In this document: positions 10,494 to 59,845 of the stretch, piece after piece
How positions within the stretch are numbered: position 1 is the stretch's first letter
Layout: the number at the start of each line of letters is the position of its first letter
Source: Macrostomum lignano
Lineage: Eukaryota
Assembly (NCBI GenBank): GCA_002269645.1
Contig: NIVC01002061.1
Span: forward strand, 62,001 to 126,000
Direction of reading: 5' to 3'
Length of the DNA stretch: 64,000 bases
Notes under the pieces: generated by a model
What the model was told of the DNA's origin: nothing
The model's database searches: none
The model's input: only the letters and a program-made list of their open reading frames with translations
Program-made: the position numbers and the translations under genes

Positions 10494-11425
<932 letters not shown>

Positions 11426-12248: not shown

Positions 12249-12338
12249 TTGCAGTACATGAGGGACACTTGCAGTACATGAGGGACACTTGCAGTACATG
12301 AGGGACACTTGCAGTACATGAGGGACACTTGCAGTACA
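12249..12338. repeat. 20-bp tandem repeat TTGCAGTACATGAGGGACAC, 4 copies plus a partial
   Basis: Identical units with no spacers, abutting the 25-bp minisatellite. Confidence 0.95.
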
Positions 12339-21364: not shown

Positions 21365-21840
21365 TAGAGTGATACTGAGGGGGAGTGATGCTAAGGGGAG
21401 TGACGCTGAGGGGGAGTGATGCTAAGGGGAGTGACGCTGAGGGGGAGTGATGCTAAGGGGAGTGACGCTGAGGGGGAGTGATGCTAAGGGGAGTGACGCT
21501 GAGGGGGAGTGATGCTGAGGTGAGTGACGCTGAGGGGGAGTGATGCTGAGGTGATCGTGACGCTGAGGGGAGTGATGCTGAGGGGAGTGACGCTGAGGTG
21601 AGTGACGCTGAGGGGGAGTGATGCTGAGGTGAGTAATGCTGAGGGGAGTGATGCTGAGGGGAGTGACGCTGAGGGGGAGTGATGCTGAGGTGAGTGACGC
21701 TGAGGGGAGTGATGCTGAGGGGAGTGACGCTGAGGGGGAGTGATGCTGAGGTGAGTGATGCTGAGGGGGAGTGATGCTGAGGAGAGTGACGCTGAGGGGA
21801 ATGATGCTGAGGGTGCTGATACTGATTGGGATGCTGATAG
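21365..21840. repeat. G-rich 15-16-bp minisatellite (GATGCTGAGGGGGAGT)n
   Basis: About 30 tandem units; same family as 56365-56735. Confidence 0.95.
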
Positions 21841-33637: not shown

Positions 33638-36600
33638 TCAATCCAGCAAAAAGCGCAGACTGTCGATTGCCTCCTTCCTGGAAACCAGTTCCCAGGTCGG
33701 AGGCAACTTTTTGATTCCTTTTCGATACTTAGCCTGCAGCTTGTCCTTAAATGTCCATGAGAACCAGTGCCAGAACTTTGCCGAATCGTTTCCTGCGTCG
33801 GGATCAATCTCCCACTCTGGAAAGTACTTTTTGTACTCTTTGTAAGGGTGATAGACTTCTTGTTTGCTGTCGGCACGACAGTTTGACGTCTGCTTACCCC
33901 TTCGCTTGCAAAAACCACATGAAAATCTGCCATCACTACTAATTTCAAATTCACAATTATTGAATGCTAGCTGATCAATTCTAATATAATAAACACCATC
34001 CACTCCAGGTGGTCTGTGCTGAATGCAGCAATGCGGGCTGCCGTCTTTTTCGTGGTGATTTTCCTGAGACTTGCAGCACGGCTCGCTACAGAAAGGGCAG
34101 CGTTCTTTGCAGCCCCAAAGGCTCTGAAGCACATCGGAGTAGAGAGTGGAGTCTCCGTGCCATCTGACTGTTGACTCGTTCATACTAGCGAAGTGCTTTA
34201 TTAGTGTGGATTTGAGGTCGCCCAGGCCGCCTAAAAGATGTTTCAGCATGTCTTCCACTTTTACATTAGATTCGTAAGTGCAAACATGATATAAGTTTTT
34301 AGGAAGCACGGCGAGCTCTTTTTCGGCTTCTTTACAGAATTCATCGATCCAAACTTTCAGTGAGGTGCACCGAGTTGCCGCCACTCTTGCCGCTTCTTCA
34401 GTCACCGCAATTGTCGGCGCAATGAGCGATGACTCGAGATGGCCTGAAAATACACTGTTGCCATCCGATGTTCTCTGAAACAGCTGACGGTTAATGAACT
34501 GCGTCAGCCATTTCAGAGCAGTAGTATGGGAATCTCTCACGTATTCAAGGATCGATTCTGCGTCACGTCTCTGTGCCATGTCCGTTAGCATGCGAACAAT
34601 GAGCTGGTACTTTGTCCTGCCGATCTCGTTCCGCATTACTCCTCTCAATTTACCTGCCATTCTTTCCTGGAAAGCCTGTTTCATCACCGAGTACAGATGG
34701 TCACGAATAAAATCAGCCACCATCTTGGCTTCGGCCTGTCGGCGGACAATGTTTTCAAATAAGTTCAACATCTTTGTCTTCGTATCGGCCAGCTTTGTTT
34801 TGATGCTGTTGGCTTCGTAAAAATTCCGCGTAATCTGCTCAAATGTTGGGTATGCAGTGCGTAGGGCGAGGACCACTACCTTGATTTCGAATGCACGCGT
34901 TGTGCGGATATGATTGCTCGATAGTCTGAGAGAGGAGTTTACTGCATCACACACGTATTTTTGTATTCGATTAACGTGAACCTTAGAAACTCCTGTCAAG
35001 CCCCCCCTCATATCCTCGCAAAGACTTTGGACGGCCTTGAGAATGTCAGATACAAAGTCTACCACTAGCTTGCGTTCTTCTTTTTCTGGCTTACTGGAAA
35101 CATAACTTTTTAATTGTTTGATTTTCAAACGTTCTGGTATGATGAGCTGAACAGTGTCTCCTTTAGGAAACAGTATTTCAGGTAAGCTATCACTTCGACC
35201 CGCTGATTGTCTCTTTAATGGCGTTTGCTCCAAAAATATGCCCACATATTTTTTTTCATTATAATAGATCTCTCGCAGTTGATCTACCACTTGACTTTCG
35301 ATACTTCCGAAGTCGACTGTTCTCTCAGGTGGCAGCTGCTGCGCGAACTCCTGCCACAGAGCTTCGAATTCCTGCAGAATTTTTTCTGTTGAGCTGCTCT
35401 TTAGCGTGGGTGCAAGTTCGGTGGCCCGTCTTATGATCTTAGACTCCCACTCCTCCGTCCGTGAACCTTGTTGAAGCTCAACTTTTTGCCCATCGCACAA
35501 GATTTGGAGTTTCTGCCGAAGTGACTGCTCAAGACTTTTGATGCAATCCCTTAAGGACACTAACTTTCGCTCCTTCCATTGTATTGTGTACTCACCGTAC
35601 TGGTTTTCATAAAAAAATACGTTTAAGGACTTCAGACCTTGCTGCTGCCAAGTTTCAAGCATAGCACGAAGCTCACTTATAGCCCTTTGCTGCACATCCG
35701 CGACAGCACTGACCGTTTCGCATTTCCTAACGGGAATCGCTGCCGATTTATAAAGCCAGTCTTCGCTCAACTCTTCAATGTAATTTGTCACTTCGAGAAA
35801 TTTGTTCTCCAGCATGTTGTAAGCCTTGAGTTCGACACTGCTTTTAAAGCTGAACACAAAGTCCTCAGAAAGTATTGCCTTCCACAAATCATTTACTCGC
35901 TGAGAAAAGTCGCTGAATCCTAGATAGCTTTTCTGTTCTTTATCAAGAATATGCAAAAGGTGCTGCTTAATCTCCTGAACACCCATCGAGTAACCCGGAT
36001 TCACTGGAGCCATGGGAGGGTCGCCTTGTAACAGATCTGACATAAAGAAAATATCCGTGTCTCTGTTGAACTGCAGAATGTCTCCGAAACGCTTCACGTC
36101 ATGGAGACCTTCTCCTTCTGCAGCTTCCTTCGTCATGTGGTCGAGTTTCTGTTGTATCTTGAATGTCGCTTCCTGCATCATCTCTTTTGCTCCAGCCGCT
36201 GCTACATTCTGGTGTATGAAGATGCAGTGTCTGTGCAGATCTCGATCTTTGTTTGCCATCTTCATCCTGATGAAGGCGTGAATCGCGATCTGCAGAATCT
36301 CATTCATCTCCGCAGCGTTCTCTCCTTTGATGTTGATGATGGTCACGTCGCCCAGTCCGATGACCAGTGTAGCCAGCTCGTTGTCATGATGATGCTTGTC
36401 CAGACCCAGCTCCGGAGCTCTCAGACCCTCGGTGTCGAGCACAGCGACATAGTCGAAAGGCATTCCCGACTCCACAGGAACTAGCTGCAGAAATGCGCCT
36501 CGAGTGCAGCGACCTGCGCTCACTGCGAACTTCAGTCCGAACATGGTGTTGAGCAGAGTGGACTTGCCTGAGCTCTGCAGACCGAGCACAGAGATCACGT

Positions 36601-38845
36601 AGATCTTCTTGTCACCGACCAGCTCCTGGCAGGTCTTGAGGATAGCAGAGATCCAGGCAGACGGGATGTTTCCAGCGTCGCCATCGAGAATCTCTAGAGG
36701 AACTCCGCACAGCAAGAGTTTGGCCATCACGCGTGGGATCAGATTGATGTCAAGCGCTCGGAAAGTCTTTGTACTTTCTGAAGAGGCAGCTAAAATGGCC
36801 TCGTAGAATTGGCCCGCCTCTCTGAATATGTTTTCGAGGCCAATTGAAGCAAGCAGTATTTGATGGCCAAGTTCGGTGAGCTGATCATCAATTGCGGTCT
36901 GTGATGATTCATCCGCAATTTCTTTACGCTGCCGCAATTCCTTCTGCATTTTTCTAAGCCTTGGCAAATGCTCTCTAGAAGAAGTGTCGAAGAAAGATCG
37001 AATGCACTGAAGCCAAAGCTTAACCAGAAGCTCATTGTCAGCAATCTTTGTCAGTGTGGTAAGAAACTCCTCCATAATGGGACTGAGTTGATTGCAGAGA
37101 CCCATTTGCTGACGTCTGGCATTGAGACGCTGATGCTGAGCTTCCAACTTGTCTTCATCTGTTGCCTTAGAAGAGTTTTCTTTTTTGTAGTGGCGACTGT
37201 AGTCCATCCATTTTTCTTGCAAAGGAAGATGTTCTTTCCTTAAGTTCATCATTCCGCTCTTCGATACTTCCCCAAAGATGGAGCTGCAAAGCTGGCTTGC
37301 CTGAGAAACGAGAGAGCCGTCATCAAAGTCAACTTTGATTTCTCCGATAGGTTTCTGCTCGGCGCCAACCTTTGCCAATGTCTCTGAAAGTCTTTGTTGA
37401 ATTTCGCCAACTATTTCACGCTCTGGTTTTTTTTTCTTTGTGTCAACGCAGGAAAATGATTTAAGGGTACTCAACAACTCGCTGCTCAGCGGATTTGCGA
37501 GTGTCTGAGATCTGTAGAGAACCACTATCACTTCTAATTCCTTCATTTTTGACATGCTTTGAAGCTGACTAAAGCACTCGGGCTGTGAAAGGGTGCTGAC
37601 GTCCACAAAGACAACCACAACTTCGGAAGCTGAAGTTAAAACATGAGATTTATCTGCAAAATCCAGCAAGTCACCTCTGAGGTTTGTTGCCAAGAAGGCT
37701 CGAGTCAGTTTAATGTTTCTGGACGGCAGAAACACGGTGGCCTCAACGAGTCCGTTGCTGCAGACTCTGCGCGCGTGGCCGTTGGTGCAGTCTCTGTGGA
37801 AGAACGTCTCATGACTGCTGCCATTGAGTAGGGAGTTCAGCAACTTGGACTTCGACACAGGCAAATCTCCGATCCTCACAAATGATACCACCGGGAAATG
37901 ATAGTCTGACATCAGGCTGGTCTCTATGTACTGGCCATTTTCGTTTATGAACTGAACTACAATGTCTTTCAGGCTCCAGCTGCTCATGACCAGAGGCTTG
38001 TCAACAGTTGAATAGATGAATGGGAAAGCCAGCTTGCAAGCAAACAGAGCTTTGCAGAGCATTTGTTGCACCTCTTTGTCACAGCAGAGGTAGCTCGCAA
38101 GCAAAATATCTATCGGGTTCAGCTCATTCTCAGAGCTGCCTTCTTCATCGTCCTCGAGGTTTAAAAGTGACATTTCATCTGATGCCGTCGTCTCTGGAAC
38201 CAAATTTCTTCCCTGTGCGTCGCAGCTGAGGAGTGCGCGGATGACTTGCCAGGCAACGGAGTTTTCCTTCAAATTTTTGCGCTCGTCCTGGCTTCTTTTG
38301 ACGAAAAGAACGTCCTTGCGCGGGATTCTCTCTGGATAATAAGACTCCAGCTCGAGACGTTCAACAGTTTCTTGAACTGATCCAAATTTTATTGGCTTTC
38401 TCGGTTCTGCAACTCCTGAGGTCGTTGGCTGTGGGTTGACAGTTGGTTCATCTGGCATCGAGCCTTGTCTTTTTGAATGTGTAGGAAATGGTGCTGGTGT
38501 TTCAAGTCTTGGCATTGGTCTTGGGGATAGCGATGGTTGAGTAGTCGACGATGGACCCGAGTCTTTCTGTACAATTTTATGCAGCTTATTAAAGAGGTCC
38601 GTCAAGGCTTGGTTGCTTTCTTCATCTCCCGCAAGCCTCCTCACCAGCGCATAGTCGATAGCTTCTAATGAGTCCAAGGTAGCAATATTTTTCTCTCTTA
38701 AGTACAGCTCTATAATGTTCAGAAACTCAGTGGATGCAAATTCGGGATGCTTTTCCGAAAGCATTTCCTTGGCGTTCAATGCAGCACTTGATAGACCGAC
38801 TTCTTCTACATCTAAAATTGTCAAATGGAAATTTCTGATTGGCAT
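33638..38845 (-). CDS. GVIN1: Interferon-induced very large GTPase 1 (GVIN1/VLIG, URGCP-related) homologue A; single coding exon, 1735 aa
   Basis: G1 SVLGLQSSGKSTLLNTMFG, G2 AGRCTRG, G3 DTEGL, HDNELATLVIGLGDVTIINIKGEN; URGCP-like NPIDILLASYLCCD..Q..CKLAFP and FFHRDC; C-terminal GCKERCPFC..C..H..HRP; splice acceptor TACAG immediately before C-ATG. Confidence 0.93.
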   Translation of the reverse strand: MPIRNFHLTILDVEEVGLSSAALNAKEMLSEKHPEFASTEFLNIIELYLREKNIATLDSLEAIDYALVRRLAGDEESNQALTDLFNKLHKIVQKDSGPSSTTQPSLSPRPMPRLETPAPFPTHSKRQGSMPDEPTVNPQPTTSGVAEPRKPIKFGSVQETVERLELESYYPERIPRKDVLFVKRSQDERKNLKENSVAWQVIRALLSCDAQGRNLVPETTASDEMSLLNLEDDEEGSSENELNPIDILLASYLCCDKEVQQMLCKALFACKLAFPFIYSTVDKPLVMSSWSLKDIVVQFINENGQYIETSLMSDYHFPVVSFVRIGDLPVSKSKLLNSLLNGSSHETFFHRDCTNGHARRVCSNGLVEATVFLPSRNIKLTRAFLATNLRGDLLDFADKSHVLTSASEVVVVFVDVSTLSQPECFSQLQSMSKMKELEVIVVLYRSQTLANPLSSELLSTLKSFSCVDTKKKKPEREIVGEIQQRLSETLAKVGAEQKPIGEIKVDFDDGSLVSQASQLCSSIFGEVSKSGMMNLRKEHLPLQEKWMDYSRHYKKENSSKATDEDKLEAQHQRLNARRQQMGLCNQLSPIMEEFLTTLTKIADNELLVKLWLQCIRSFFDTSSREHLPRLRKMQKELRQRKEIADESSQTAIDDQLTELGHQILLASIGLENIFREAGQFYEAILAASSESTKTFRALDINLIPRVMAKLLLCGVPLEILDGDAGNIPSAWISAILKTCQELVGDKKIYVISVLGLQSSGKSTLLNTMFGLKFAVSAGRCTRGAFLQLVPVESGMPFDYVAVLDTEGLRAPELGLDKHHHDNELATLVIGLGDVTIINIKGENAAEMNEILQIAIHAFIRMKMANKDRDLHRHCIFIHQNVAAAGAKEMMQEATFKIQQKLDHMTKEAAEGEGLHDVKRFGDILQFNRDTDIFFMSDLLQGDPPMAPVNPGYSMGVQEIKQHLLHILDKEQKSYLGFSDFSQRVNDLWKAILSEDFVFSFKSSVELKAYNMLENKFLEVTNYIEELSEDWLYKSAAIPVRKCETVSAVADVQQRAISELRAMLETWQQQGLKSLNVFFYENQYGEYTIQWKERKLVSLRDCIKSLEQSLRQKLQILCDGQKVELQQGSRTEEWESKIIRRATELAPTLKSSSTEKILQEFEALWQEFAQQLPPERTVDFGSIESQVVDQLREIYYNEKKYVGIFLEQTPLKRQSAGRSDSLPEILFPKGDTVQLIIPERLKIKQLKSYVSSKPEKEERKLVVDFVSDILKAVQSLCEDMRGGLTGVSKVHVNRIQKYVCDAVNSSLRLSSNHIRTTRAFEIKVVVLALRTAYPTFEQITRNFYEANSIKTKLADTKTKMLNLFENIVRRQAEAKMVADFIRDHLYSVMKQAFQERMAGKLRGVMRNEIGRTKYQLIVRMLTDMAQRRDAESILEYVRDSHTTALKWLTQFINRQLFQRTSDGNSVFSGHLESSLIAPTIAVTEEAARVAATRCTSLKVWIDEFCKEAEKELAVLPKNLYHVCTYESNVKVEDMLKHLLGGLGDLKSTLIKHFASMNESTVRWHGDSTLYSDVLQSLWGCKERCPFCSEPCCKSQENHHEKDGSPHCCIQHRPPGVDGVYYIRIDQLAFNNCEFEISSDGRFSCGFCKRRGKQTSNCRADSKQEVYHPYKEYKKYFPEWEIDPDAGNDSAKFWHWFSWTFKDKLQAKYRKGIKKLPPTWELVSRKEAIDSLRFLLD

Positions 38846-39149
38846 GCTGTATAAAAGTTAATTACGTAACTGTGAGTAATTTATTTTTATGAATTATACA
38901 ATCCCAGACTTGGATTTGGCATGCAGAAAGGTCCAGCAGTCCACTCTACCATAGACGAAACTCGGGTAGCTCAGTCTTGGCTAGTCGCGTCTTACTTTGG
39001 TATGCTTAAAAATTTTGACTATCTAGACTGGTCTAGGCAAAAACCTAGCCTACTACTGAGCTGACTTGGTCAATGCTTTTTGATAGTTTTCTAGTGACTG
39101 CTACTGCCACTGAAAGATCGCTCGTTGCATTAGCTTGGATTTAGTCGAG

Positions 39150-39417
39150 ACCGACCTTGAGAGAGTGACTCCTATGCTTTAACTATGCTTGACACTCTCG
39201 TATCTTGGTACGGGTAGCTTTCAGCAGAACCTGGCTGCCCTTGGAGGGATCAACCAGAGCACTCTGTCTCGATGCTACTGGGAAGTGGCATTGAATCACA
39301 TGATTGAGTTTACGACTGGATAATATCAGCTTTCCAGGCTCAGGCGTCGAGCTGGAACGCATCTCAATGGGGTTTTACCAAATTTGTCCACTGCCCCATG
39401 TAATCGGTAATATTTCT
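39150..39417 (+). mobile_element. PIF/Harbinger (HARBI1-like) transposase relic
   Basis: Translates to YLGTGSFQQNLAALGGINQSTLSRCYWEV and GFYQICPLPHVIGNI, matching the Harbinger HTH (ATGSFQ..G.SQ.T.SR) and the FP.VIG.ID region; frameshifts and stops. Confidence 0.7.
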
Positions 39418-39770
39418 ATTCAATTTCTGGACGAATTTGTCAACTAAAAAATCTACGATTCGATTAATTCCCGATCTTGAGGTCAAGTGCGCGGTGGATT
39501 GGGTCAGTTCATGACTCGAAGGATTTTCTGCAACAGTGATCTATCTCTACAGTTTTCTTCTAGATACGCAATGGAGCGGCTGGCTGTCTTCTTGATTCTT
39601 GCTATCTACTTATCTGCATGTCTCTACAAGAAATGAATCCCTTAAAAATGGCGCCTAAGTGGGGCGGACTAGCCTAGACTATTCTAGCCTAGATTAATAT
39701 CGATAGCTAGTCTCGACTAGGTTTGTGCACTTTAAGACCTGAACTATCCAGTCCGGACTAGCTAGTCTGG

Positions 39771-39856
39771 ACCACAGATTCTAATATACACTAGGTGGGC
39801 CACTCTCTTAAAAAGCTGTCTCTTTTGCTTACTGTCTATGATATAGAATCTGTGGT
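39771..39856. repeat. 86-bp mini inverted-repeat element
   Basis: ACCACAGATTCTA ... TAGAATCTGTGGT, flanked by CTGG on both sides. Confidence 0.5.
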
Positions 39857-39872
39857 CTGGGCTACGCTTTCT

Positions 39873-40295
39873 CATGGATGAAGGAATAGAAAGGATCGCT
39901 CATCTGAAAGCGAGTCTATGGCCAAAACCTCCTAAAAATTGGGATATTCCCCCCATGAATTTAATGGAATTGATGGAATTTAATAATAGTCCCCCCTAAG
40001 CTCCTACTGACTGAAGCTTCTACGCGAGGGAAATTCCAAAGTCACGATTAACGTTAGACATTTTTTGCTTCCTCTGGGCCACGACCATTCTATTCTTACC
40101 TCCATGGCCATGACGGCATAAGGAAAAGAAATTAGCATTCCACCGCGTACAAGCCTCTGCCATTAAGAATTTAGTTGGGACTATTATTAAATTACATCAG
40201 CCAATGAAATTCATGGGGGGACATCCCCATTTTTAGGAGGTTTTAGCCATAGACTCGCTTTCAGATGAGCGATCCTTTCGATTCCTTCATCCATG
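39873..40295. mobile_element. P-element-superfamily-type MITE, 423 bp
   Basis: ~100-bp imperfect TIRs beginning CATGGATGAAGGAAT; perfect 8-bp TSD CGCTTTCT (39865-39872, 40296-40303). Confidence 0.85.
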
Positions 40296-40514
40296 CGCTT
40301 TCTGCGTACGTCCTCACGAGTGCGCGTTGCTATGCACTCGTGAGTACACGAGTGTCTATGGAATTATTGCAAAATCAAGCCGTGCATCTATCAAATTGCC
40401 GACGGGTATAGCCCATCGTGGAGAAGACCATAGACAAAGTTCAATTAGCGTGAATTATTTCGCAATCGTCTACCTCCAAAACCATATACAAAATCTGCCG
40501 TTGTCCCATGAATC

Positions 40515-41086
40515 TTATATTTTTAGTAGCCTTAATAATGATTTTGAAGCGTTGAATAATGAGCGTACAGCATGACACAATGACAATACAGAACAACATA
40601 ATCTACCGGCTTGAAAGTTGACCCTCTTAACGTCGGCCGCCGTCGTCCTCTTGAGTCCAATTTTGTTTCCAAACTTAGCGCTGTAGCACCTCTCGCAGAA
40701 GATGTCGCCCTGCGCTACGAACAATTTTGTCACTTGAAGCTGTGCGTTGCATTCTCCTGTGAAAGGAAACACGATAATAGCGGTTTTACCCACAGATAAA
40801 ATAAAAACAATCATATTTTAAAGATTGAGACTTTTTAAAACAGTGCTGCATATCGACTATACCGGTTTAAGTAAAGTGTGCGGTATGATTCGTTCCGATG
40901 CCAAATATATTTCTGCCAATTGAAAGCTCGCCAGTCAGACTGCCAAGAGCTGGTTCACTTACCGTTACCGCACCGCAGGCAGCGTTTGTGCCAGCTCTTG
41001 CCGGCTGCGCACTGAGCCTCAGCAGGGAACACCTGTTCGCTGCACCGAGGGCACCCGAGGCACCGGGGTGGATGCCCTTCTTCCAT
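40515..41086 (-). CDS. Small single-LIM protein, CRP/CSRP/MLP-like; exons 41086-40963 and 40756-40515 (3' end uncertain); ~121 aa
   Basis: Exon 1 MEEGHPPRCLGCPRCSEQVFPAEAQCAAGKSWHKRCLRCGN|GTAAGT; acceptor TTTCACAG| then ECNAQLQVTKLFVAQGDIFCERCYSAKFG. This is a complete LIM (C-x2-C..H-x2-C..C..C-x2-C) resembling CSRP LIM2, with compatible phases. Confidence 0.85.
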
Positions 41087-42120
41087 GTGCCTGTTTTGAC
41101 TTTTTAATGCGATTAAAAAGCATGCATTTCATGGTTTTGAGGTACTTTCGGTTCGGTTAAATTTAACAAAAATGAACCTCGTTTTCTAATTGTTAATAAA
41201 TCTATATGCATAACGAATAAAATGTAAACTTTGCCTTACTAAATTAAAGGTATACAATAAAATAAATAAACAAAATGAACACATTGAAACACTTGACTAA
41301 GGACTTCTTTTGAAATTAGATCATAATTTAGACACTAAAAATTGTAGCAGCAATTAAGAAAGCGGTATATAGTGCATATACGAGCGTACAGAAGGCTATC
41401 ATTGTCATTGGATTAAAAGTTTGTAGTGCAATTACTGTACTCGTATAATCATGTCCTAATTGTCCGTAAAACAAGTATAATTAACAAATTAATAAATATT
41501 TGTTAAAGTAGATGATCAAGATTATGAAAATACTTCAGAGCTTTTATCAATGCTAAATTTAGTTTAAATTGCAGCTATATGACTGTGAACGGAAGTTCGC
41601 TGGATTTTTAATAGAAAAATAAAAGACGATATAGCTACTAGAAGGAATACTTCTGATAACTACGCAGCTACGTACAGTATAAGAATCAACAAGCTACTAA
41701 ACATGAGTAAGTAGAAAAATTTCTCTTTAGTTTACCTGTGTCTTATTAGTACATGCTTTAAGTTTGAAAGATAGTTCGTAAACTGACATGAGAATATAAA
41801 AGCTTGCTCAGTAGTTGGCATTTGAACTAAAAATGATATTGTAGCTCCGCCATACTATATAGAGTGCAGGGCGGGCATATTCAGTAAAAAGCAGAGCGTT
41901 AAGAAGATGCTGAATACATAACTCGATATCGTTCAGGTCCGCTTTTATAGTCTAAAATTTAATTACTTCAATTGGAAAACAGCGAATAGAAAAAAGTCAG
42001 CATGGCCTCTAGGGCCTATCTAGGGTCCATTTTACAAGTTTCAAATAACAAGTGAAAATTGCCAATATTCCGAGAACTTTTACACAGCTCTTCGCTTTTT
42101 CCATGAACAGGCACGCACCC

Positions 42121-42430
42121 GGGGGTGTTTTATAAAGCTAAGCTTGATCTTAAGTGCCAACTTACACATTAACTTAGGGGTAAGGGGGTCATACTATAAA
42201 GCTGTCGTAGCGTAAGTTCGATCGTACGTCGGAACTTTTACACTGCGGAGAATCTAAGAACCATCTTATCTTACGATGGCTTTATAGAACGGGCCCGACA
42301 TGTTTTATAAAGATAAATGTAAGTCTTAGCTGGGAACCAACTTAGGTACGACCTAAGATAAGATTGAACTTATGGTCATTGGGCCCGTTTTATAAAGCCA
42401 TCGTAAGATAAGATCGTTCTTCATCGTAAG
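42121..42430. mobile_element. Cluster of Harbinger-like MITE termini
   Basis: 33-bp inverted repeat with 1 mismatch (42264-42296 / 42381-42413, GGGCCCGTTTTATAAAGCCATCGTAAGATAAGA); further GTTTTATAAAG termini at ~42127 and ~42302. Confidence 0.55.
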
Positions 42431-42645
42431 ATAAGATAAAATCTTCATGAAAATACTATTAATTTGTCAAGGCACTTTCGGATTTCTCATGAAATGGACC
42501 CCAAAATTTATTAAAAGTCCCTTACTCGGCGCAAAAATTAGCTATTGATATGAAAAACAGCCTAATCATTAAAAGATTAAACTTGAAATAAAAAATAAAA
42601 GTGCGTGTTAGCTACTGTAGGGCTTTTTAATGACCAATGTAAATT

Positions 42646-45600
42646 TTAAATAAGACCTTGAAGACTTTCAATGGCAGCACACTTTGAAACCAATCGCCAT
42701 TCTGGCGGAATCCGATCCATCCTGATTCCTTTGGTTCGTTCCAGCTCCTCCTTGAAGCGCCACACGAACCATTTCCAAAACACTGCGTCCGAATTTCTCT
42801 CGTCTGGGGGGATATCCCAGTCTGGGAAGTACCTTCGGTAAGCAGAATAGCGGTGTTGGTAGTTTGGATCGAAATTGCGCTGGACGCAGTTCTCCGATGG
42901 CTTAGTGCTATATTGGCACGCTGAGCAGGAAAACGTGATTCTTCGAGGTCCAGTGTCAAGATGCAGCCAGGATCCGCAAGTTTGAGCCATAAACTCCCTT
43001 GTTGCCACCCAGTGCCAGCCGGAGACTCCCTGTGGTCTGTGCTGCACGCAGTGATGCGGACTGCCATCAATGTCAAAATGGTGCAACAAAGACTTGCAGC
43101 ACGGCTCTCTGCAGAATGGGCATTGCTCCTTGCAGCCCCAAATTTTGCTGAGCACAGATGAGCACAAATCTGTTTCACCGCAAACAACTTCTTTAACATT
43201 CCGGACATTTGAATAGTGTTGCATCAGACGACTTTTCAGATTGCTTATTTCAGAGACTACAGTGCGAACAACTTCCTCCAAATTTGCTGATTTATAACTT
43301 TTCAGCTGAACCAGATCATTTGAACCAAACTGAATGTCAGCTGGCATGAGGGAAGGAAGCTTTTCAATCCACTCTTGAAAACTTTTCGATTGAGCTGCAG
43401 AATCTTGTATCGATCTTTTTGCACTTTCCAGCTGCGGGTCAATCAGTGACTTAACTATTGTTATAAGTTCAATGCCAGCCTGGCTACTGTGCCCTAGAAA
43501 TGTAGCATTAATGTACTGATCAAGCCAGTAGAAAGCACTTTCATATGGTACAGCGATGTATTTAGCCAGTGAGTCGAAGTCCTCTCTATCTGCCATGTCT
43601 TTCAGCATGCACACAATCAGATGGTATTTTGTCCTCCCCAAATCATTCAAGATCCTGCTTCGTAGGTCAGCTCCGACTTTCCAATCAGTCAACCGAATCA
43701 CCAAAGCGCGCAGATGGCCCATGAAATACTCAGCCACGATTTCACTGTCGCATTTTCCTTGGACTGTGCTCTCAAACAGTCTCCACATTCGTTCTTTTGA
43801 GTCTGCGAGTTTTGCTTTCTGACCGCTTTTATCAACAAACCTTCTGTCCATTGCGACAAGGTGTGGAAAGGCGAATCTGAATGCAATGACTGTCAGTCTT
43901 ATTTCCAACTCGTTAGTGAGTCCAATCCACTGCTCTCTAAACTTCTCTGACGCTAGTTTTTGCAAACCAACACGAATCATTTGATGAATTGTTGGGATGT
44001 CTGAGCCCTTCTTTGCAAGTTCAACAACTGCTTTAACTAGTTCTTTGCTTTCGGTCAGTACTGTGACAGACCTGTTCTTTTTTGCATCTGCTGCGTTTGA
44101 TAACGGTTTAGTTCCGCATTTCGAGTCGCCTTCTATCGATGCGTAAAGGGTAGATCGATTTGGCACAAGACTATGTTCCACTACATTTTCGATTGACTCA
44201 TCAGGTTTCAATGAAATTGGGGATTCCCGAAGAACATCGTCGAGGGTGCGACCCTCGCTTGAGTAAAATTGCTTTAGGTGGTCTACTATCATTTTTTCTA
44301 TCACAAGTCGTTTATTTTTTGGCTGAGATGCAAACTGACTTTCTAATTGCTTCCAAAGTTTGTCAAACTCTTCGCGAATTTGTTTAGCTGAAACGTTCTT
44401 TTGTCTTTTAGTCAATTCATTCCCTCTTGCCACCACCATCTGTTCCCATTTCTGCTGCTGAAAACCCTGCTCTAACTCCTCTCTCTGCTCGCTGCACATC
44501 GCTTCCATTTTTCTGTGTGTCTCAAGTTCAAGGTTGCGAAAGCTGTGTTTGAGATTCTCCAACGTTTTTTCTTGGAAATGCAGCACGTACTCTCGGTATG
44601 GGCTTTCGTTGAAAAACCTTTTTAAAATGTCCGACGTGTCCTTAAATTCTTTCATGAGAAATTCTGTCAGATTCGCTTTGGATCTTGCTAAAGTCTCAGC
44701 AATCAACTCGCATGTTGAACACACTCGAATGGCATTGGCTACGGTACTCTGCAGCCATTCCTCTAAGCGGTCTTCAACATCGCCCATTGTTTTTAGGAGT
44801 CTTTTTTCAAGTCTGATATATGCTTTCCGCTCAATGCTATTCCTAAAACTGAACACAAAGTCCTCAGACAGTATTGCCTTCCACAAATCATTTACTCGAT
44901 GAGAAAAGTCGCTGAATCCCAGATAGCTCTTCTGTTCTCGATCAAAAATGTGCAAAAGGTGCTGCTTAACCTCCTGAACACCCATCGAGTAGCCTGGATT
45001 CACTGGAGCCATGGGAGGGTCGCCCTTTAACAGATCTGATATGAAGAAAATATCCGTGTCTCTGTTGAACTGCAGAATGTCTCCGAAACGCTTCACGTCA
45101 TTGAGACCTTCTCCCAATGCAGTTTCTTTCGTCATGTCGTCAAGGGTTTGATGCATTTTGAATGTCGCTTCCTGCATCATCTCTTTTGCTCCAGCCGCTG
45201 CTACATTTTGATGAGCAAAAATGCAACGCCGTTTTATGTTAATCATTCTGTTTGCCATCTTCATCCTGATGAAAGCGTGAATCGCAATCTGTAGGATATC
45301 CTTCATCTCTGCAGCGTTCTCTCCTTTGATGTTGATGATGGTCACGTCTCCAAGTCCGATGACCAGTGTAGCCAGCTCGTTGTCATGGTGATGCTTGTCT
45401 AGACCCAGCTCGGGAGCTCTAAGACCCTCGGTGTCGAGCACAGCGACATAGTCGAACGGCATTCCCGACTCCACCGGAACCAGCTGCAGAAATGCGCCTC
45501 GAGTGCAGCGACCCGCACTCACTGCGAACTTCAGTCCGAACATGGTGTTGAGCAGAGTGGACTTGCCTGAGCTCTGCAGACCGAGCACGGAGATCACGTA

Positions 45601-48149
45601 GATCTTCTTGTCACCGACCAGCTCATGGCAGCTCTTGAGGATGGCAGAGATCCAGGCAGACGGGATGTTTCCAGCGTCGCCATCGAGAATCTCTAGAGGA
45701 ACTCCTAGCATCAGAAGATTTGCAAAGCACTTTGGTAAGTTGTTTACTAAAGGCCTTTTATCGGTTAAAATGTCGATTTCGGCTTCTTGAAGGGCTTCAA
45801 AAAGTTGACCCTCTTCTCTAAAAAGATGTTCCAGTCCTACGGAGCAGCTCCGCAGTTTTTTTTCGAGCTTTTTTAGCTGCTGTTCAGTTCTTAGTCTCTC
45901 TTGCATTTGCTTTGTTCCCAGTTTGTCTACCAGCTCTCTTTTGCGTTCTAACAAAGCCGGGAAGGTTTTCCTTGACTTCTCATCAAGCTTCAGCTTTATG
46001 CATTGTACATACAGCTTTGCTAGTAAGAAATTGTCGTTGCAATCACTGGCTGCGTTCAATACTTTTGCAAACGTTAGGGCAAGTGTCTTTGATGCCTTCA
46101 GTATTTCGATTTGCTTATTTCGAATGCCAGCTCTTCTTAACGAGCTGACCTCAATTTCTTCAGGAGATTTAATATTGTACTCCTTTCTCAGTAGTTGACT
46201 GTATTCTAGCCACAGAGCCGTCAGGGGCAAGCATTCTTGTGCCAAGTTCGTCTGGTCTCCCGCGTCAATTTTAATCAGCAGTGCGACGGCACTTTTCATA
46301 GTTCCACCTGGGAAACTATCGAAATCGGACTGCTGGAGTTGCTGCGCGAACGGAATTTCTCTATTTAAATTTTCATTAACCAGCTTTTGAGCGAGCTCGC
46401 GACTTAGGTCACTGAGAAGCTCCCGTTCCGCTTTTGGTCTCCTTCCACTAAAAGCTGTTACTGTTGGCAACGATGCAACAATTTCTTTTTCCTCTTCGGT
46501 GTATTCTTGAGACTTGCTTTTAGTAGATCTGACCATTTCTTTGAACACAACGAGAATGATTTCAGCTTTTTCTCTCAGATTCCGAAGACTTTGCAAGCAC
46601 TCTTGCCCTCTAAGTATTTCCAACTCGACAAAAACTACAATGACATGGGAGACTTCGGCCAATAGGCGAGCTTGCTCATCGAACTCTAAAACGTTTCCTC
46701 GAAGATTTGCTGTCAAGAATGGCCGGGCCATGCCGGCCGAAGTGCTTGTCTTCGACGGCAGAAACACTGTGGCCTCAACCAGACCGTTGCTGCAAAGCCT
46801 TCGAGTTTGTCCGCCGAAGCAGTCTCTGTGAAAGAATGTCTCATGACTGCTGCCATTGATAAGAGAGTTCAGCAGCTTGGACTTGGACACAGGCAGCTCT
46901 CCGATCCTCACAAAGGACACCACTGGAAGCGGGTAATCTGAAACTAGACTGGTCTCGACGTACTGACCGTTCGGATCTCGAAATTGGAGAATGATGTCTC
47001 TCAGGCTCCAGTTGCTCATCACTAATGAGTCCTTCTCATCTCGGTAGATAAGTGGAAAAGCCAACTTGCAGGCAAACAGAGTCTTGCACAGGATTTGCTG
47101 CACCTCCTGGTCGCAGCAGAGGTAGCAGCAGAGAAGAGCATCGATTGGGTTGACTCCTTCCTCCGAATTATCCTCTTCTTCCTCTTGCAAACTAATTTTT
47201 GATTGCAAAAGGATGCTGGAATCCGGCCTAACAGCTCGTCCGTCATAATTAAAAAGCTGTCTTAGTAGATACCAGGACGTTTGAGTTGGCTCCAGGCTCT
47301 CTGGTGCCTCAATGTTAGATGCTACGACTTTAATTATTTGCGTGAAAGGTATGGACATTGGAAACCAGTCACTCATTCCTATTTTAGTCACCATTTCTCT
47401 CAAACCAGAGTTTTCCGTGTAAGTTTCTTGAGTCTGCCTATCTTTTTGTGCTTCAATTTCGTGCGAGTCAACTTCAAGAGATTTCTTATGAGTTGTCTCG
47501 ACATCTTCAGCCTCACTTTCCGATTCGGACCTCTCAGAGCGCTGCGCTTCGTCATCATTGCCTGGCTCAGTAGCTGGAGAGTCAGTAGCCGTGTTGGAGT
47601 GTCCAGCTTGGTTTTCTTGGCTGTCGAGTTCATCGCACTGCATGGCAGCTCCCTTTTCGTCATCAGTCTCTTGATCCGAACAGTTGTTAGGAACTCTCAC
47701 ACAGGCTTCGGGTTGAATCTGGATGTCTCCTGACTGTAGAGTCAACAGGTACTCCAAGAGAGCATTAATATCCACTGAGCAGCATTTTCCGGGTTCCTGG
47801 TTATGCATCTTCTTTCCTGGCAAATTTCCTTCTATATCTTTTCTGGTGCTTTCCTTTTTTGTCTGATATTTCTGAACTTTCGCTATAGCATCTCTGTTTT
47901 CAACAAAAAGAGATTTTATTTCATCCAGTTGTCTTAAAACACGGTCTGCCATTTCTTTGTCCTCTTGGCTGTCTTGTTGCTGAGCGAGACTCTCGTGGTC
48001 GTTTTTAAAGGTCAGATGAAAAACGCTGGGTACGGTTTTCACGGACATGCAGTACTTTTGAAGTTTGTTTTTCCACTTTTCTGCGTCTGCCTCAACCAGA
48101 AACTGACGAAGAGCGACTTCAATGGCCCTGTTCATTGATGGCGGCTCAT
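42646..48149 (-). CDS. GVIN1: GVIN1/VLIG homologue B, main coding exon (1841 aa with the upstream exon at 52088-52067)
   Basis: Same G1-G3 motifs, URGCP-like domain and C-terminal GCKEQCPFC..HRP as copy A. The ORF-track start (48168) is a TTG within the acceptor TTTTTCATTCCAG| (exon starts 48149); first in-exon in-frame ATG at 48135. Confidence 0.93.
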
Positions 48150-48618
48150 CTGGAATGAAAAATGGCAAAGCCAGTGGGCCAGCTGCTAGTTGCTACTAAT
48201 ATCAGATTAACAATTGGTCAGTTCACGTGCCTATATTTTCCATAAAAACCTGGTGCAAAAGGTATTGAACATTGATTTTGATTTCTACGACAAAAGGCGG
48301 TGCTAAAATTGTTTTAGCAATTTCAGCGCCAATTACACAATTTTATACATCAGAGGGCTATGCGCTGGAAACAGAATCTTTCAATTATCCCATCTTCTGA
48401 TCAAATGAATTGATGAAATTAATTCGAAACTTTGAAGCTTCCAAACTGGTACAACTGCGCTTGTGCCAGTGTGTGCCTGTCAAACTGCGCGTGTCCATGT
48501 GTAAAAATTAAAATTTGCGCTTGTGGATGTGTCTTTCTGTGTCTATTTCCAGGAAATATGTCTATATTTTTATAGAGAAGTCTTTACTATTGCTTTCGAC
48601 CTTAAGTCTACATCTAAC

Positions 48619-56364: not shown

Positions 56365-56735
56365 ATGGGAGTGATGCTAAGGGAATGATGCTGAGGGGAG
56401 TGATGCTGAGTGGATAATGCAGAGGGGATGATGCTGAGTGGATAATGCTGAGCGGATAATGCTGAGCGGATGATGCTGGGGGAGTGATGCTGAGGGGATG
56501 ATGCTGAGTGGATAATGCTGAGGGAATGATGCTGAGGGGATGATCCTGAGGGGAGTGATGCTGAGGGAAGTGATGCTGAGGATATGATGCTGAGGGGATG
56601 ATGCTGGGGGAGTGATGCTGAGGGAAGTGATGCTGAGGATATGATGCTGAGGGGATGATGCTGGGGGAGTGATGCTGAGGGAAGTGATGCTGAGGATATG
56701 ATGCTGAGGGGATGATGCTGAGCGGGAATGATGTT
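56365..56735. repeat. G-rich (GATGCTGAGGGGAT/GAGT)n minisatellite
   Basis: Same motif family as 21365-21840. Confidence 0.93.
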
Positions 56736-57217
56736 GAGTTGGAACGATGGTGCGGAGGGAGCGATTTCAGCCCGGTAGCCATTTTATAGCTTGCTAGCTC
56801 CAGTTAGCTCATGTTCGTCTCAGTATGCACTGCGATTACGGTACGCAATTCCCTTCCACATTCAATTTAAACTATATGTGCAAAAGAGAACCATCGAGAC
56901 AAACCAGATGTTTTCAGCAGGACTGCAACACTTCCGGTCTCAGATCTCAGCTGACAGATCTCTACCACTCTCACACAGTCGCACGCACGGTTCCGCCAGC
57001 TCACAGCCTGCTCACTGCCTGCTTACAGCTATATTTATCCACAGCTTCCCATGCATCGCCGTTCAAGAAGCACCTCGGGGAGCCATTGGAGTTCTAAGAG
57101 AGCGAAGAAAATTAGCACATACAGGAGTACAGACTTATTGGAGGCGGCGACACAGAGAGACAGAAAGAGACAGGCGCAGGCGGGCGGGGGGAAGCAGGCG
57201 GGGAGGTTTCTGATTGA

Positions 57218-57714: not shown

Positions 57715-59845
57715 AGAGTTCTGAAAGATCTAGCGCTCACAAAAACGCTGGCAGAATAGAAGGCTGATTCCACAGCTATAGATGGGCTATGGCCTCTAAT
57801 AGACAAAATTTGCCACTGTTTGTCTATCAATCTGTCAATCAAGAGCAACATCGCATGAGTAGCCAACTGTTAAATTGAGTTCATCTTATGATTTGCCACA
57901 ACTTTAGGTAATCCGTTTAAAATATTTTCCAAAACAATCTGGTATTTCGTTTCTTAGATCTCCCAGATCGAGCTTTCACTGTTGTCCATTTGAGTTTTCC
58001 CTTTTTTCATTGAAATTGCAACTTGTCCCCGAATAATTTTATAAGAAACTCCAAGAGAGCGCTTGCGACTGCTGCTCTCTAATTCTTGAAGAGGCTGTTG
58101 TCCTTCTTTTGTGAATGCTAGCGACTACTGGTTGTCAGGTCTGAGACTGACATTAGCGGCAAATCCTGTGATTCTGAGAAGACACCTGGCGCATCCCTTC
58201 TTTTGTTGCAATTCAAAATATCCCGTTCTTTGGACTACTCTTGTACCCAGGCAAAGCGTTTAACAACTAGCAGAGATCACCTTAGGTAGCAACTCGGTAT
58301 TCGCTAATACTAATTGTCGCAGGTGAAAAATAAAAGTGTAAAGATGAGTGTCTTCTGGCTGGACTCCTGACCCGGTTGTTCGGTGGCTTAGGCCTGGGTG
58401 AAATCAATAATATACGATATTTGTGCCAAGCTATCAGTACAGCTCCAAAGCTACTTTGCAATGCAATCAGGCGAACGGGATGGTTAAACATGGTTCTCCT
58501 GCATCCAAGCAATTAAGTTGCAGTCAAGGCTGTTGAGATATTCTGCGACTTCTTTTAGAAATATTGTATTTCCACGTTTCCACTGATTCCAAGGAAATTC
58601 TTGCAAGCACAACTAACACAGGCCTTCGATTTGCAGAGCCTTGCAGCCTTGCAGCTGAAGTCAAATACGTATTTGAGCTTCAATTCAGCTAAAAACTTGT
58701 CACCCAAGCTGATATTCAGGACCTTCGACACGTTGTAGAAAACTTGAGAATCTGCGTAGGAAGTTGGCTCATTTTGCCACAAACTTAAAAAACCCCACTA
58801 ACCTCAAATGCTAGTGACATTACATGCTGGTGGTGACCTAATTAAAGCTCTTCTGCTGTTCATTGTGGTCATGATTGAAGGTTAAAGAAGGCCATGTTAA
58901 AGAATTTCGGTCACACGAGACATGGCATCAAGGCAGCTGGAAGGTAAGCGGGCTCCTGCTGGCTGACCGAGTTTCTGCTGACCCAGGTGATCCTCTGAAA
59001 TTCACGATCTCAGTTAACCAATTCATTAGGAATAGAGGGTGGCCCGGCGTTCTGAAAATACCTCGAGGGGGTTGCTTTCATAAACGCAAAACTTCACAAC
59101 CGCTAAATCACTACTTCCATAAGCGCTGAATTTCATAAACACGAAACAGTTTCTGCTGCGTGGTAAAACTTCATGTTAATGAAACTTAGTTTTCTGCAAG
59201 AGGCTGAAAATCAATTATTCGGATTTATAAAACTACGGTCTATAAAAGCTATGAAGTGTTGGTGGTTTGAACGATTGAAGATCCAAGTCGAAGTTCCCGT
59301 CTCTCAAATGAACGCACTGTTGCACTGTACTTGTACGGAACTAAATAAACAGAATACGACAAAACAGGCGGCCAATTAAGTCTCTTTGAAATATTTACCA
59401 ATTTTATAACCCATAGAATTTGATCCCTGTAGCACTGTTTATTCGGCAACAAACTATACTTTTTGAACATTCCCCGTTTCTTCACACCCACCCTTTTATC
59501 GTTACTGTTGGAAATGACAAGCTAAGGCGAGCAATTGCTATGAGACGAGAATACGATAGCTCTGAGCCAATGCTCCGTGCGAAACTATTTATTATCAACG
59601 ATAAAGCACGAACCCGCGACAACCCCCCAACCCAGGACTAAAACTCACCGCACTGCACATTAGAGCACGATGACAATAATAACTTGATACGTACACTCAG
59701 ACTGAACAAAAGTACAAGCACCAGTGAAATAAGCAATCAAATAATAAACAGTGCGAAGCCCCGCCCAAGCCTAACACTGCTCCCCACAAAAAGCAGACAA
59801 AATTCAAAGACAGTCACTTGAAATCCCCACAGTCAATTTCACTCA

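What the first reader, a model, noticed from the sequence alone, without database searches (positions are those of the whole stretch)
35850..45705. GTPase core of two giant VLIG paralogues is homogenised while the rest has diverged beyond DNA alignment
Seen: 35850-36706 and 44849-45705 align at a constant 8999-bp offset at both ends, roughly 90% identical by eye with runs of more than 60 bp perfect including synonymous sites. Identity stops abruptly after GAACTCC. Flanking helical regions share only scattered residues, and the URGCP-like segment (37720-37900 vs 46760-46940) is intermediate. Known: GVIN/VLIG are dynamin-superfamily immune GTPases, interferon-induced in vertebrates. Inference: concerted evolution keeps the G-domains compatible (for example for hetero-oligomerisation) while N-terminal, middle and C-terminal regions diversify. 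This would be a modular invertebrate immune GTPase system, mirrored by the VWDE pair in the same window.
Basis: partly seen in the sequence, partly recalled or inferred. Interest (0 to 1): 0.8.

Follow-up and report, generated by a model that had tools for sequence, protein, structure and literature searches.

The report
Old gene-conversion tract in flatworm GTPase pair
Two neighbouring giant GTPase genes of the flatworm Macrostomum lignano really do share an 862-bp near-identical stretch encoding the GTPase domain. It is a patchy copy-paste (gene conversion) event about as old as the duplication of the whole locus, an ordinary process already described for mammalian Mx GTPases, not an actively maintained system.

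Summary
Window 35845-36706 and 44844-45705 are 91% identical at a constant offset of 8999 bp. They lie inside two tandem minus-strand giant ORFs: A (33638-38845) and B (42646-48168). These are VLIG/URGCP-family GTPases of Macrostomum lignano, otherwise 20-40% identical in protein.

Synonymous divergence shows gene conversion, not purifying selection:
- A-B fourfold sites differ at 16% in the core, against 53-63% elsewhere (Fisher 6e-6 and 4e-15).
- The same core against a third paralogue, C, differs at about 58-60%.
- Segment trees are incongruent.

The "concerted evolution for G-domain compatibility" reading is not supported:
- Core divergence A-B (dS about 0.2) equals the divergence between A and its copies A'/A'' at two other loci.
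- B remnants beside A'/A'' carry the identical 5' breakpoint.
- The genealogy of the core is a star.

So the exchange predates the split of the loci, and the cores have since drifted apart at the synonymous rate under purifying selection. B keeps unconverted patches inside the tract, and B has been destroyed at the sister loci.

The closest precedent is the GTPase-domain-restricted conversion between mammalian MxA and MxB. This is a new member of a known kind, of modest interest.

The parts
33638..38845 (-). Gene A giant coding exon (1735 codons). VLIG/URGCP-family GTPase, = M. lignano Mlig019641.g2 (PAA61198.1).
   Evidence: ORF; translation; Pfam URGCP 165 bits and URGCP_GTPase 377 bits; 100% match to P0001.
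40608..41119 (-). Two small upstream exons of gene A (40940-41119 and 40608-40760) encoding a LIM zinc-finger domain that the deposited gene model joins to the VLIG body.
   Evidence: tblastn of the P0001 N-terminus; Pfam LIM 34 bits against a cut-off of 22.9. A half-LIM is also present in the A'' model P0006.
42646..48168 (-). Gene B giant coding exon (ORF of 1840 codons; the real exon starts near 48150). VLIG/URGCP-family GTPase, = Mlig019641.g1 (PAA61199.1).
35845..36706 (-). Converted tract in A (A residues 714-1000), encoding the GBP/atlastin-like G domain from just before the P-loop to well past the G4 strand.
   Evidence: dS 0.18-0.26 against saturated flanks. Fold and PDB sequence hits to GBP1, atlastin and Sey1p.
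44844..45705 (-). Converted tract in B, at a constant +8999 offset from the tract in A.
45208..45248 (-). Unconverted island in B (= A 36209-36249), 24 of 41 mismatches. Encodes NRMINIKRR against A's NKDRDLHRH, the loop just before the strand that aligns with the Sey1p RD (G4) motif.
   Evidence: Sey1p alignment; secondary structure of the model. The B' remnants carry the A-type sequence here (0 of 41 differences from A).
45102..45157 (-). Second partly unconverted patch in B (= A 36103-36158). 14 of 56 mismatches, 13 of them private to B; lies in the helix after the G4 strand.
37722..38094 (-). Conserved N-terminal URGCP domain segment of A (counterpart in B 46754-47126). 77.7% nucleotide identity, explained mainly by protein-level constraint.
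   Evidence: dS 1.8 and dN 0.22; fourfold sites 24 of 45 different. One sub-window (A residues 317-376) has pS 0.48 against 0.65-0.75 versus C, so an older exchange cannot be excluded.
36516..36580 (-). 65-bp stretch at the P-loop that is identical not only in A, B and A' but also in the distant paralogue C on another contig.
   Evidence: Synonymous sites of the same stretch are almost all different in the homologue from another species (L004).

Best explanation
A and B are ancient tandem, same-strand paralogues of the VLIG/URGCP large-GTPase family in Macrostomum lignano. An 862-bp segment encoding the GBP/atlastin-type G domain was overwritten by non-reciprocal homologous recombination (interlocus gene conversion) between them. 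The tract is patchy in B, which retains a 41-bp island and a 56-bp patch. That pattern fits patchy mismatch repair of one heteroduplex, or two to three separate short events. The exchange took place before, or at about the time, the locus itself was duplicated (dS about 0.2). This is many times older than the 1-2% divergence typical of the recent M. lignano subgenomes. Since then each core has diverged at the normal synonymous rate, while purifying selection (dN/dS 0.07-0.2) keeps the protein almost unchanged. I infer that the tract sits on the G domain because this is the only long block where the paralogues keep enough nucleotide identity to pair (A vs the unconverted paralogue C: 77% and 66% in the two halves of the core, about 50% outside). 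A second reason is that swapping a conserved catalytic module is harmless (the 'tolerated conversion' model). Shown: the exchange, its boundaries, its mosaic structure and its relative age. Inferred: the mechanism of patchiness, the reason for its location, and the direction. At least one A-to-B' transfer is indicated by the A-type island in the B' remnants.
For: Identity and breakpoints. Synonymous divergence: core A-B dS 0.18 (5' half) and 0.26 (3' half), against pS 0.73-0.86 (saturated) in all other segments. The equally constrained URGCP domain has dS 1.8. Fourfold sites: A-B differ at 19 of 116 in the core, 24 of 45 in the URGCP domain and 104 of 166 outside the core (Fisher 6e-6 and 4e-15). 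A-C and B-C differ at 52 of 89 and 52 of 87 in the core, so there is no general nucleotide-level constraint or codon-bias effect. Tree incongruence: the split (A,A')|(B,C) has 100% bootstrap in every non-core segment, 7% in the 5' core and 20% in the 3' core. Age: A-A' non-core dS is 0.20 and A-A' core fourfold difference is 16%. All pairwise differences among A, A', A'', B and the B' remnants in the 5' core are 16-29 of 457, except within the two recent pairs (A'-A'' 13, B'f-B''f 1). The NJ tree of the core is a four-lineage star, with every inter-lineage grouping at or below 40% bootstrap. The 59 bp immediately upstream give (A,A',A'') 99% and (B,B'f,B''f) 99%, so both loci share one breakpoint. 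Typical subgenome divergence is 1.1% in CDS (PMC10733133). Conservation of the core among unconverted paralogues. A second, much younger tract in an unrelated paralogue pair of the same window (pS 0.01-0.05 over 150 codons) shows that such exchange is a general property of this genome region.
Against: A few sites conflict with a clean single-event history. {A,B} share a state against all sister-locus copies at 36695 and 36683. {A,B'f} group against {B,A'} at 36401, 36232 and 36227. {A,A''} group against {B,A'} at 36044, 36026 and 35996. So small later exchanges probably occurred. The direction of the main event could not be determined. GC3 is raised in the 5' core (0.68) but equally in the unconverted paralogue C (0.64), so there is no specific signature of GC-biased conversion. 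Only one genome assembly and one full B copy were available.
Confidence: 0.7

Rival explanations
1. Neutral but genuinely ongoing concerted evolution. All copies of the core (A, B, A', A'' and the B' remnants) keep exchanging short tracts at a low rate. The roughly 4-6% divergence is then an equilibrium rather than the age of one event.
For: Conflicting site patterns in the core. Recent tracts between loci elsewhere in the gene: A'' is A-like (1-5% different) but 10-19% from A' over A ~34700-35500, and the URGCP domain is nearly identical among A, A' and A'' (1 of 67 fourfold sites). The B' remnants carry the A-type island and are closest to A. A'-A'' differ more in the core (13 of 457) than in neighbouring gene segments (0-2 per 200). 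The EGF pair has a recent tract.
Against: A-B is no closer than A-A' or A'-B in the core. No long recent A-B tract exists beyond 50-62 bp perfect stretches. The island and patch 2 in B were never overwritten.
Confidence: 0.2
2. One reading: selection actively maintains identical G domains so that A and B can hetero-oligomerise, while the other regions diversify as specificity modules of an immune system.
For: The tract coincides with the G domain, which in GBP/atlastin-type GTPases is the nucleotide-dependent dimer interface (established knowledge; fold match). Core dN/dS is low (0.07-0.2). The flanks are very divergent.
Against: Protein identity of the core is explained by purifying selection alone: the domain is 65% identical to C and 51% to a homologue from another species. 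No homogenisation has occurred since the loci split. B was deleted down to a roughly 600-bp remnant beside both A' and A'', which remain intact. B retains private residues inside the G domain (island and patch 2). No segment shows dN/dS above 1 between A and A'. Immune role, expression and interaction are all untested.
Confidence: 0.08
3. No exchange at all: strong purifying selection, codon bias or an embedded nucleotide-level element (RNA structure, antisense transcript) keeps the core similar.
For: The G domain is the most conserved part of the family. GC3 is raised there. A 65-bp run is identical even in paralogue C.
Against: Fourfold sites of the same core are 58-60% different against C, and nearly all differ at the P-loop in the other-species homologue. 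The boundaries are abrupt to the nucleotide and do not follow protein conservation at the 3' end, where B's FRNSIERKAY resembles C rather than A. The B' pseudogene remnants share the same tract.
Confidence: 0.02
4. Assembly or polishing artefact that pasted one paralogue's reads into the other.
For: M. lignano assemblies are known to be error-prone in paralogous regions (PMC10733133).
Against: The copies differ at 76 positions spread over the tract. Both ORFs stay open. The same tract with the same breakpoint is present on two other independent contigs.
Confidence: 0.02

Closest known systems
Localised gene conversion between the tandem dynamin-like antiviral GTPases MxA and MxB of mammals (Mitchell, Young, Emerman & Malik 2015, PMC4687636)
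   Same: Adjacent paralogous large GTPases of the dynamin superfamily. Exchange is restricted to the segment encoding the GTPase (plus BSE) domain including the P-loop, while target-specifying regions stay diverged. Segment trees are incongruent. The authors propose the same competing explanations: tolerated conversion, a hotspot, or adaptive exchange.
   Different: In Mx, conversion is recurrent in many lineages and spans exons and introns. Here only one old, patchy episode inside a single giant exon can be demonstrated. The family (VLIG/URGCP) and the host (a flatworm) also differ, and no antiviral role is known.
VLIG-1/GVINP1 and URGCP, the very large inducible GTPases of vertebrates (Klamp et al. 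2003; Li et al. 2009; from my own knowledge)
   Same: Same Pfam architecture: URGCP N-domain, URGCP_GTPase, GVIN1_C. Size is about 1700-1850 aa and the coding sequence lies in one giant exon. UniRef names them 'VLIG-type G domain-containing protein'.
   Different: Interferon does not exist in flatworms, so inducibility and function are unknown. Gene A carries an N-terminal LIM domain in its gene model, which I do not know from vertebrate VLIGs.
Classical partial gene conversion between tandem duplicates (globins, opsins, RHD/RHCE, GBP clusters; reviewed by Chen et al. 2007, from my own knowledge)
   Same: Tract length of 0.05-2 kb, sharp boundaries, mosaic tracts, dependence on proximity and pre-existing identity, and low dS inside against outside the tract.
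   Different: Nothing essential. This is a further instance.

Membership tests
VLIG/GVIN/URGCP large GTPase family | VLIG-type G domain (Pfam URGCP_GTPase PF25683) with P-loop GxxxxGKS and DxxG | tested here: met
   A 376.6 bits and B 364.9 bits against a cut-off of 55. GLQSSGKST and DTEG are present in both.
VLIG/GVIN/URGCP large GTPase family | N-terminal URGCP domain (PF25496) and C-terminal GVIN1_C (PF26772) | tested here: met
   URGCP 165 and 177 bits against a cut-off of 27. GVIN1_C is listed only in the precomputed Pfam hits for P0001-P0004; I did not re-scan it.
VLIG/GVIN/URGCP large GTPase family | Very large protein encoded essentially by one giant exon | tested here: met
   Uninterrupted ORFs of 5208 and 5523 bp. 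Only small 5' exons lie outside them.
VLIG/GVIN/URGCP large GTPase family | Induction by interferon or infection; role in cell-autonomous immunity | not testable with these tools
   No expression data were available. No paper in the held library links flatworm VLIGs to immunity.
Dynamin superfamily, GBP/atlastin/Sey1 branch | Large G domain with the GBP/atlastin fold | tested here: met
   phmmer against PDB: Sey1p 1.1e-6, GBP2 and GBP1 about 5e-4. The AF2 model (pLDDT 62.7, pTM 0.65) gives Foldseek top hits to the hGBP1 LG domain (1.5e-7), GBP2/5, atlastin-3 and RNF112, with TM 0.4-0.5. Model confidence is moderate.
Interlocus (ectopic) gene conversion tract | Synonymous divergence inside the tract far below that of the flanks and of equally constrained domains | tested here: met
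   (Fisher 6e-6 and 4e-15).
Interlocus (ectopic) gene conversion tract | Abrupt boundaries and phylogenetic incongruence between the tract and the flanks | tested here: met
Interlocus (ectopic) gene conversion tract | GC-biased signature in the tract | tested here: inconclusive
   GC3 is 0.67-0.70 in the 5' core but 0.64 in the unconverted paralogue C, and 0.50-0.54 in the 3' core.
Ongoing concerted evolution | Paralogues within a locus closer to each other in the tract than to the corresponding copy at the duplicated locus | tested here: not met
   Core differences in the 5' and 3' converted segments: A-B 22/457 and 16/258; A-A' 19/457 and 19/258; A'-B 23/457 and 16/258. The tree is a star.

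The most novel reading that the evidence does not exclude
The three M. lignano VLIG loci (the window, NIVC01001902 and NIVC01000990) are the three subgenome copies of one locus, and that locus is hyper-divergent. Divergence is about 10% in CDS against a genome-typical 1.1%. B is present in one copy and destroyed in the others, and patches are continually exchanged among the copies. This would resemble an invertebrate counterpart of vertebrate immune-GTPase clusters under balancing or diversifying selection. The shared G domain would be retained because A and B co-assemble through it.
Probability: 0.1. Interest if true: 0.6.

Novelty: new member of a known kind. Interest (0 to 1): 0.3.

Why it matters
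This is a clean, well-dated example of domain-restricted gene conversion in an unstudied invertebrate branch of the VLIG/URGCP GTPases. It parallels what was described for mammalian Mx genes.

Practically, VLIG phylogenies built on the G domain will mis-date paralogues in this genome. Tests for selection on these genes must be partitioned at the breakpoints. The locus also shows how mosaic the paralogous copies of the neopolyploid M. lignano genome can be. It does not, on present evidence, reveal a new mechanism or a modular immune system.

Tried and rejected
1. Purifying selection or codon bias as the cause was rejected by fourfold-site comparisons with paralogue C and with a homologue from another species.
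2. GC-biased conversion signature: uninformative, because GC3 is high in the conserved blocks of all paralogues.
3. Direction of the main conversion could not be inferred, since A, B and C are about equidistant outside the tract. Only the A-type island in the B' remnants points to one A-to-B' transfer.
4. Search for further copies. One whole-database protein search and one cluster look-up found only A, B, A', A'', the C family and one distant homologue. No orthologues from other Macrostomum species turned up, so the recurrent-versus-single question could not be settled phylogenetically.
5. Subgenome (S/L1/L2) assignment of the three loci was not possible. The 10-kb flanks share only repeats with the window, and the window flanks hold no conserved gene usable as a synteny marker.
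6. Possible older conversion in the URGCP domain. There is a weak signal only (pS 0.48 in one 60-codon window against 0.65-0.75 versus C), so I do not claim it.
7. The structure model is of moderate confidence only. I used it just to place the island and patch 2 in secondary-structure elements, not for any interface argument.
8. Literature searches for invertebrate or flatworm VLIG biology found nothing relevant.
Full report
**1. What is in the window**

The segment holds two very long open reading frames on the minus strand: A at 33638-38845 (1735 codons) and B at 42646-48168 (1840 codons). Both carry the Pfam URGCP N-domain and the URGCP-like GTPase domain, with scores far above the curated cut-offs.

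[quoted passage not shown] These are Mlig019641.g2 (= A, PAA61198.1) and Mlig019641.g1 (= B, PAA61199.1), on a 141.8-kb contig of assembly GCA_002269645.1. UniRef names the family 'VLIG-type G domain-containing protein'.

Sequence comparison with solved structures finds Sey1p, GBP2 and GBP1. A moderate-confidence AlphaFold model of A residues about 681-1010 (pLDDT 62.7, pTM 0.65) matches the large GTPase domains of GBP1, GBP2, GBP5, atlastin-3 and RNF112. So the G domain belongs to the GBP/atlastin/Sey1 branch of the dynamin superfamily.

**2. The observation**

- At the constant offset of 8999 bp the quoted coordinates are 91.2% identical.
- BLASTN extends this to 35845-36706 vs 44844-45705, 91.4%.
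- Perfect runs reach 71, 62, 58 and 50 bp.
- Both copies read ...GAGGAACTCC up to 36706/45705 and are unrelated from the next base on.
- Outside the tract the two genes are 43-48% identical in DNA and 12-40% in protein.
- The exception is the N-terminal URGCP domain (37722-38094 vs 46754-47126, 77.7%).

It needs one refinement: the tract is a mosaic.

| Segment (A coordinates) | A-B mismatches |
|---|---|
| 36250-36706 | 22 of 457 |
| 36209-36249 (island) | 24 of 41 |
| 36159-36208 | 0 of 50 |
| 36103-36158 (patch 2) | 14 of 56 (13 private to B) |
| 35845-36102 | 16 of 258 |

**3. Exchange or constraint?**

Nei-Gojobori estimates by segment give A-B dS of 0.18 in the 5' core and 0.26 in the 3' core. 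Every other segment is saturated (pS 0.73-0.86). The URGCP domain is itself strongly constrained (dN 0.22) but has dS 1.8.

| Pair | Fourfold sites differing, core | URGCP domain | All non-core |
|---|---|---|---|
| A-B | 19 of 116 (16%) | 24 of 45 (53%) | 104 of 166 (63%) |
| A-C | 52 of 89 (58%) | n/a | n/a |
| B-C | 52 of 87 (60%) | n/a | n/a |

Fisher's exact test for A-B gives 6e-6 (core vs URGCP domain) and 4e-15 (core vs non-core). The control is a third paralogue, C (Mlig002402.g2, locus L002). At the P-loop of a homologue from another species nearly every synonymous site differs. Hence neither codon bias nor a nucleotide-level element explains the similarity.

In a quartet analysis the split (A,A')|(B,C) has 100% bootstrap in all four non-core segments, but only 7% and 20% in the two halves of the core.

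**4. How old is it?**

Two further loci of the same genome carry A-type genes. A' is P0002 on NIVC01001902 (locus L001). A'' is P0006 on NIVC01000990 (locus L003). A' and A'' are a recent pair: their flanks are 98.4-99.6% identical. A differs from them by about 10% in DNA (non-core dS 0.20, dN 0.073).

Upstream of both A' and A'' lies a roughly 600-bp remnant of a B gene (L001 6500-7103, L003 9052-9702). It consists of 59 bp of unmistakably B-type sequence followed by the 5' half of the core. It is then cut off by a deletion that joins it to the A-B intergenic sequence.

The remnants switch from B-type to the shared core sequence at exactly the same nucleotide as B in the window:
- In the 59 bp upstream, (A,A',A'') and (B,B'f,B''f) each have 99% bootstrap.
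- In the 457 bp downstream the four lineages (A; B; A'+A''; the remnants) form an unresolved star, with every grouping at or below 40%.
- Pairwise differences between lineages are 16-29 of 457.
- At fourfold sites A-B in the core (16%) equals A-A' in the core (16%) and is close to A-A' elsewhere (12%).

So the core was homogenised before, or about when, the locus was duplicated, and has not been re-homogenised since. For scale, the three subgenome copies of M. lignano typically differ by 2.2% overall and 1.1% in coding sequence (PMC10733133). The event is therefore much older than the recent polyploidisation. Since the event the cores have accumulated mainly synonymous changes (5' core: 18 synonymous and 4 non-synonymous differences, dN/dS about 0.07). 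Purifying selection, not repeated conversion, now keeps the proteins alike.

**5. Fine structure**

The island in B (NRMINIKRR against A's NKDRDLHRH) lies in the loop between a long helix and the strand CIF(I/A)HQNV. That strand aligns with the RD (G4) strand of Sey1p. Patch 2 lies in the following helix.

In both places B resembles paralogue C at the protein level (NRM...RRRC, KM..), so these are retained B sequence rather than new mutations. The B' remnants carry the A-type island (0 of 41 differences from A). At least one further A-to-B' transfer, or a differently repaired heteroduplex, must therefore be assumed.

A handful of sites conflict with a strict star, which suggests minor later exchanges. 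Larger recent exchanges between loci are evident elsewhere in the gene:
- A'' is A-like over A ~34700-35500, where A' is 10-19% different.
- The URGCP domain of A, A' and A'' is almost identical at fourfold sites (1 of 67).

**6. Why the G domain?**

This part is inference. The tract starts exactly where nucleotide conservation among all paralogues starts (A vs C about 50% upstream, 77% downstream). It ends within about 30 bp of where that conservation ends. Homologous pairing needs stretches of near-identity (established knowledge on minimal efficient processing segments), and the G domain is the only block that offers them. Replacing one conserved catalytic module by another is also unlikely to be harmful. 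This is the 'tolerated conversion' model discussed for Mx genes (PMC4687636).

An unrelated head-to-head pair of EGF-type ORFs in the same window shows a younger tract of about 500 bp (8567-9066 vs its inverted copy near 15170-15669; 97-100% identity; pS 0.01-0.05 against 0.66-0.79 further on). That supports a general mechanistic propensity rather than a VLIG-specific selected system.

**7.

Its core inference, exchange of the G-domain segment, is right. The functional superstructure is not supported:
- There is no continuing homogenisation.
- B keeps private residues within the G domain.
- B has been destroyed at both sister loci while A' and A'' remain intact.
- Protein conservation of the G domain extends to C (65%) and to another species (51%) without any conversion.
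- No gene segment shows dN/dS above 1 between A and A' (0.07-0.57).

Hetero-oligomerisation and immune function remain untested possibilities.

**8. Comparison with what is known**

The closest described case is localised conversion of the BSE-GTPase segment between the tandem MxA and MxB genes of mammals. Partial conversion between tandem duplicates in general is textbook. Membership in the VLIG/URGCP family is met on domain architecture and gene structure. Inducibility and immune function could not be tested, and I found no literature on flatworm VLIGs.

**9. Verdict**

This is a real and nicely resolvable feature, but an ordinary evolutionary process: a new member of a known kind. Interest is modest (0.3). 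Its practical value lies in partitioning phylogenetic and selection analyses of these genes. It is also one of several signs that this M. lignano region is highly mosaic.

Noticed in passing
window 40608-40760 and 40940-41119 (minus strand): Upstream exons of gene A encode a LIM zinc-finger domain that the deposited model joins to the VLIG body (Pfam LIM 34 bits). The A'' model (P0006) starts with half a LIM domain. A LIM-VLIG fusion is an architecture I do not know from vertebrate VLIGs; it could also be a gene-model artefact.
   Followed up: partly
window 8567-9066 vs about 15170-15669 (inverted); ORFs 6163-9048 (-) and 15188-16768 (+): A head-to-head pair of paralogous ORFs, one with a teneurin-type EGF hit and no VWD hit found. 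The first 150 codons or so are 97-100% identical (pS 0.01-0.05), while the rest is at pS 0.66-0.79. This is a second and much younger conversion tract in the same window.
   Followed up: partly
window 36516-36580 (A), 45515-45579 (B); L002 (paralogue C): A 65-bp perfect match at the P-loop between A/B/A' and the otherwise 77%-identical paralogue C on another contig. Synonymous sites of this stretch are not conserved in a homologue from another species. It may be a micro-conversion between distant paralogues, or chance.
   Followed up: partly
L001 6500-7103 and L003 9052-9702: Remnants of a B gene beside A' and A''. Only 59 bp of B-type flank plus the 5' half of the G-domain core survive; the rest was removed by a deletion equivalent to window ~41901-45160 and by upstream rearrangement. 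B is therefore present at one locus and destroyed at the other two.
   Followed up: yes
window 34700-35500 and 37650-38150 vs L001/L003: The three A-type genes are mosaics. A'' matches A (1-5% different) where A' is 10-19% different. In the URGCP domain all three are nearly identical, although the genes differ by about 10% overall. This indicates recent exchange between loci.
   Followed up: partly
window vs L001/L003 as whole loci: A differs from A'/A'' by about 10% in coding DNA and 26-31% in alignable intergenic DNA, against the 1-2% reported as typical between M. lignano subgenome copies. No near-identical second copy of A or B is annotated. Whether this is an anomalously divergent homeologous locus or an older duplication is unresolved.
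   Followed up: partly
window 59506-63725: Ty3/gypsy-type LTR retrotransposon with 271-bp LTRs that are 99.3% identical (59506-59776 and 63455-63725). ORFs encode zinc knuckle, protease and RT (61300-63483) and RNase H and integrase (59846-61369). It is probably a recent insertion.
   Followed up: partly
window 1-4486; 10494-11399; 12335-13394; 21367-21813; 56367-56738: Tandem repeat arrays. A 20-bp satellite (AGCGCCGCGGGCACCATTTT, about 227 copies) runs off the window start. Others are a (GACA)n array, a 25-bp repeat and two related 14-15-bp minisatellites. A copy of the minisatellite family also lies downstream of A' (L001 ~16750-17030).
   Followed up: no
L001 17058-18542: A THAP / P-element-transposase-like gene lies just downstream of A'. 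It has no counterpart downstream of A in the window.
   Followed up: no
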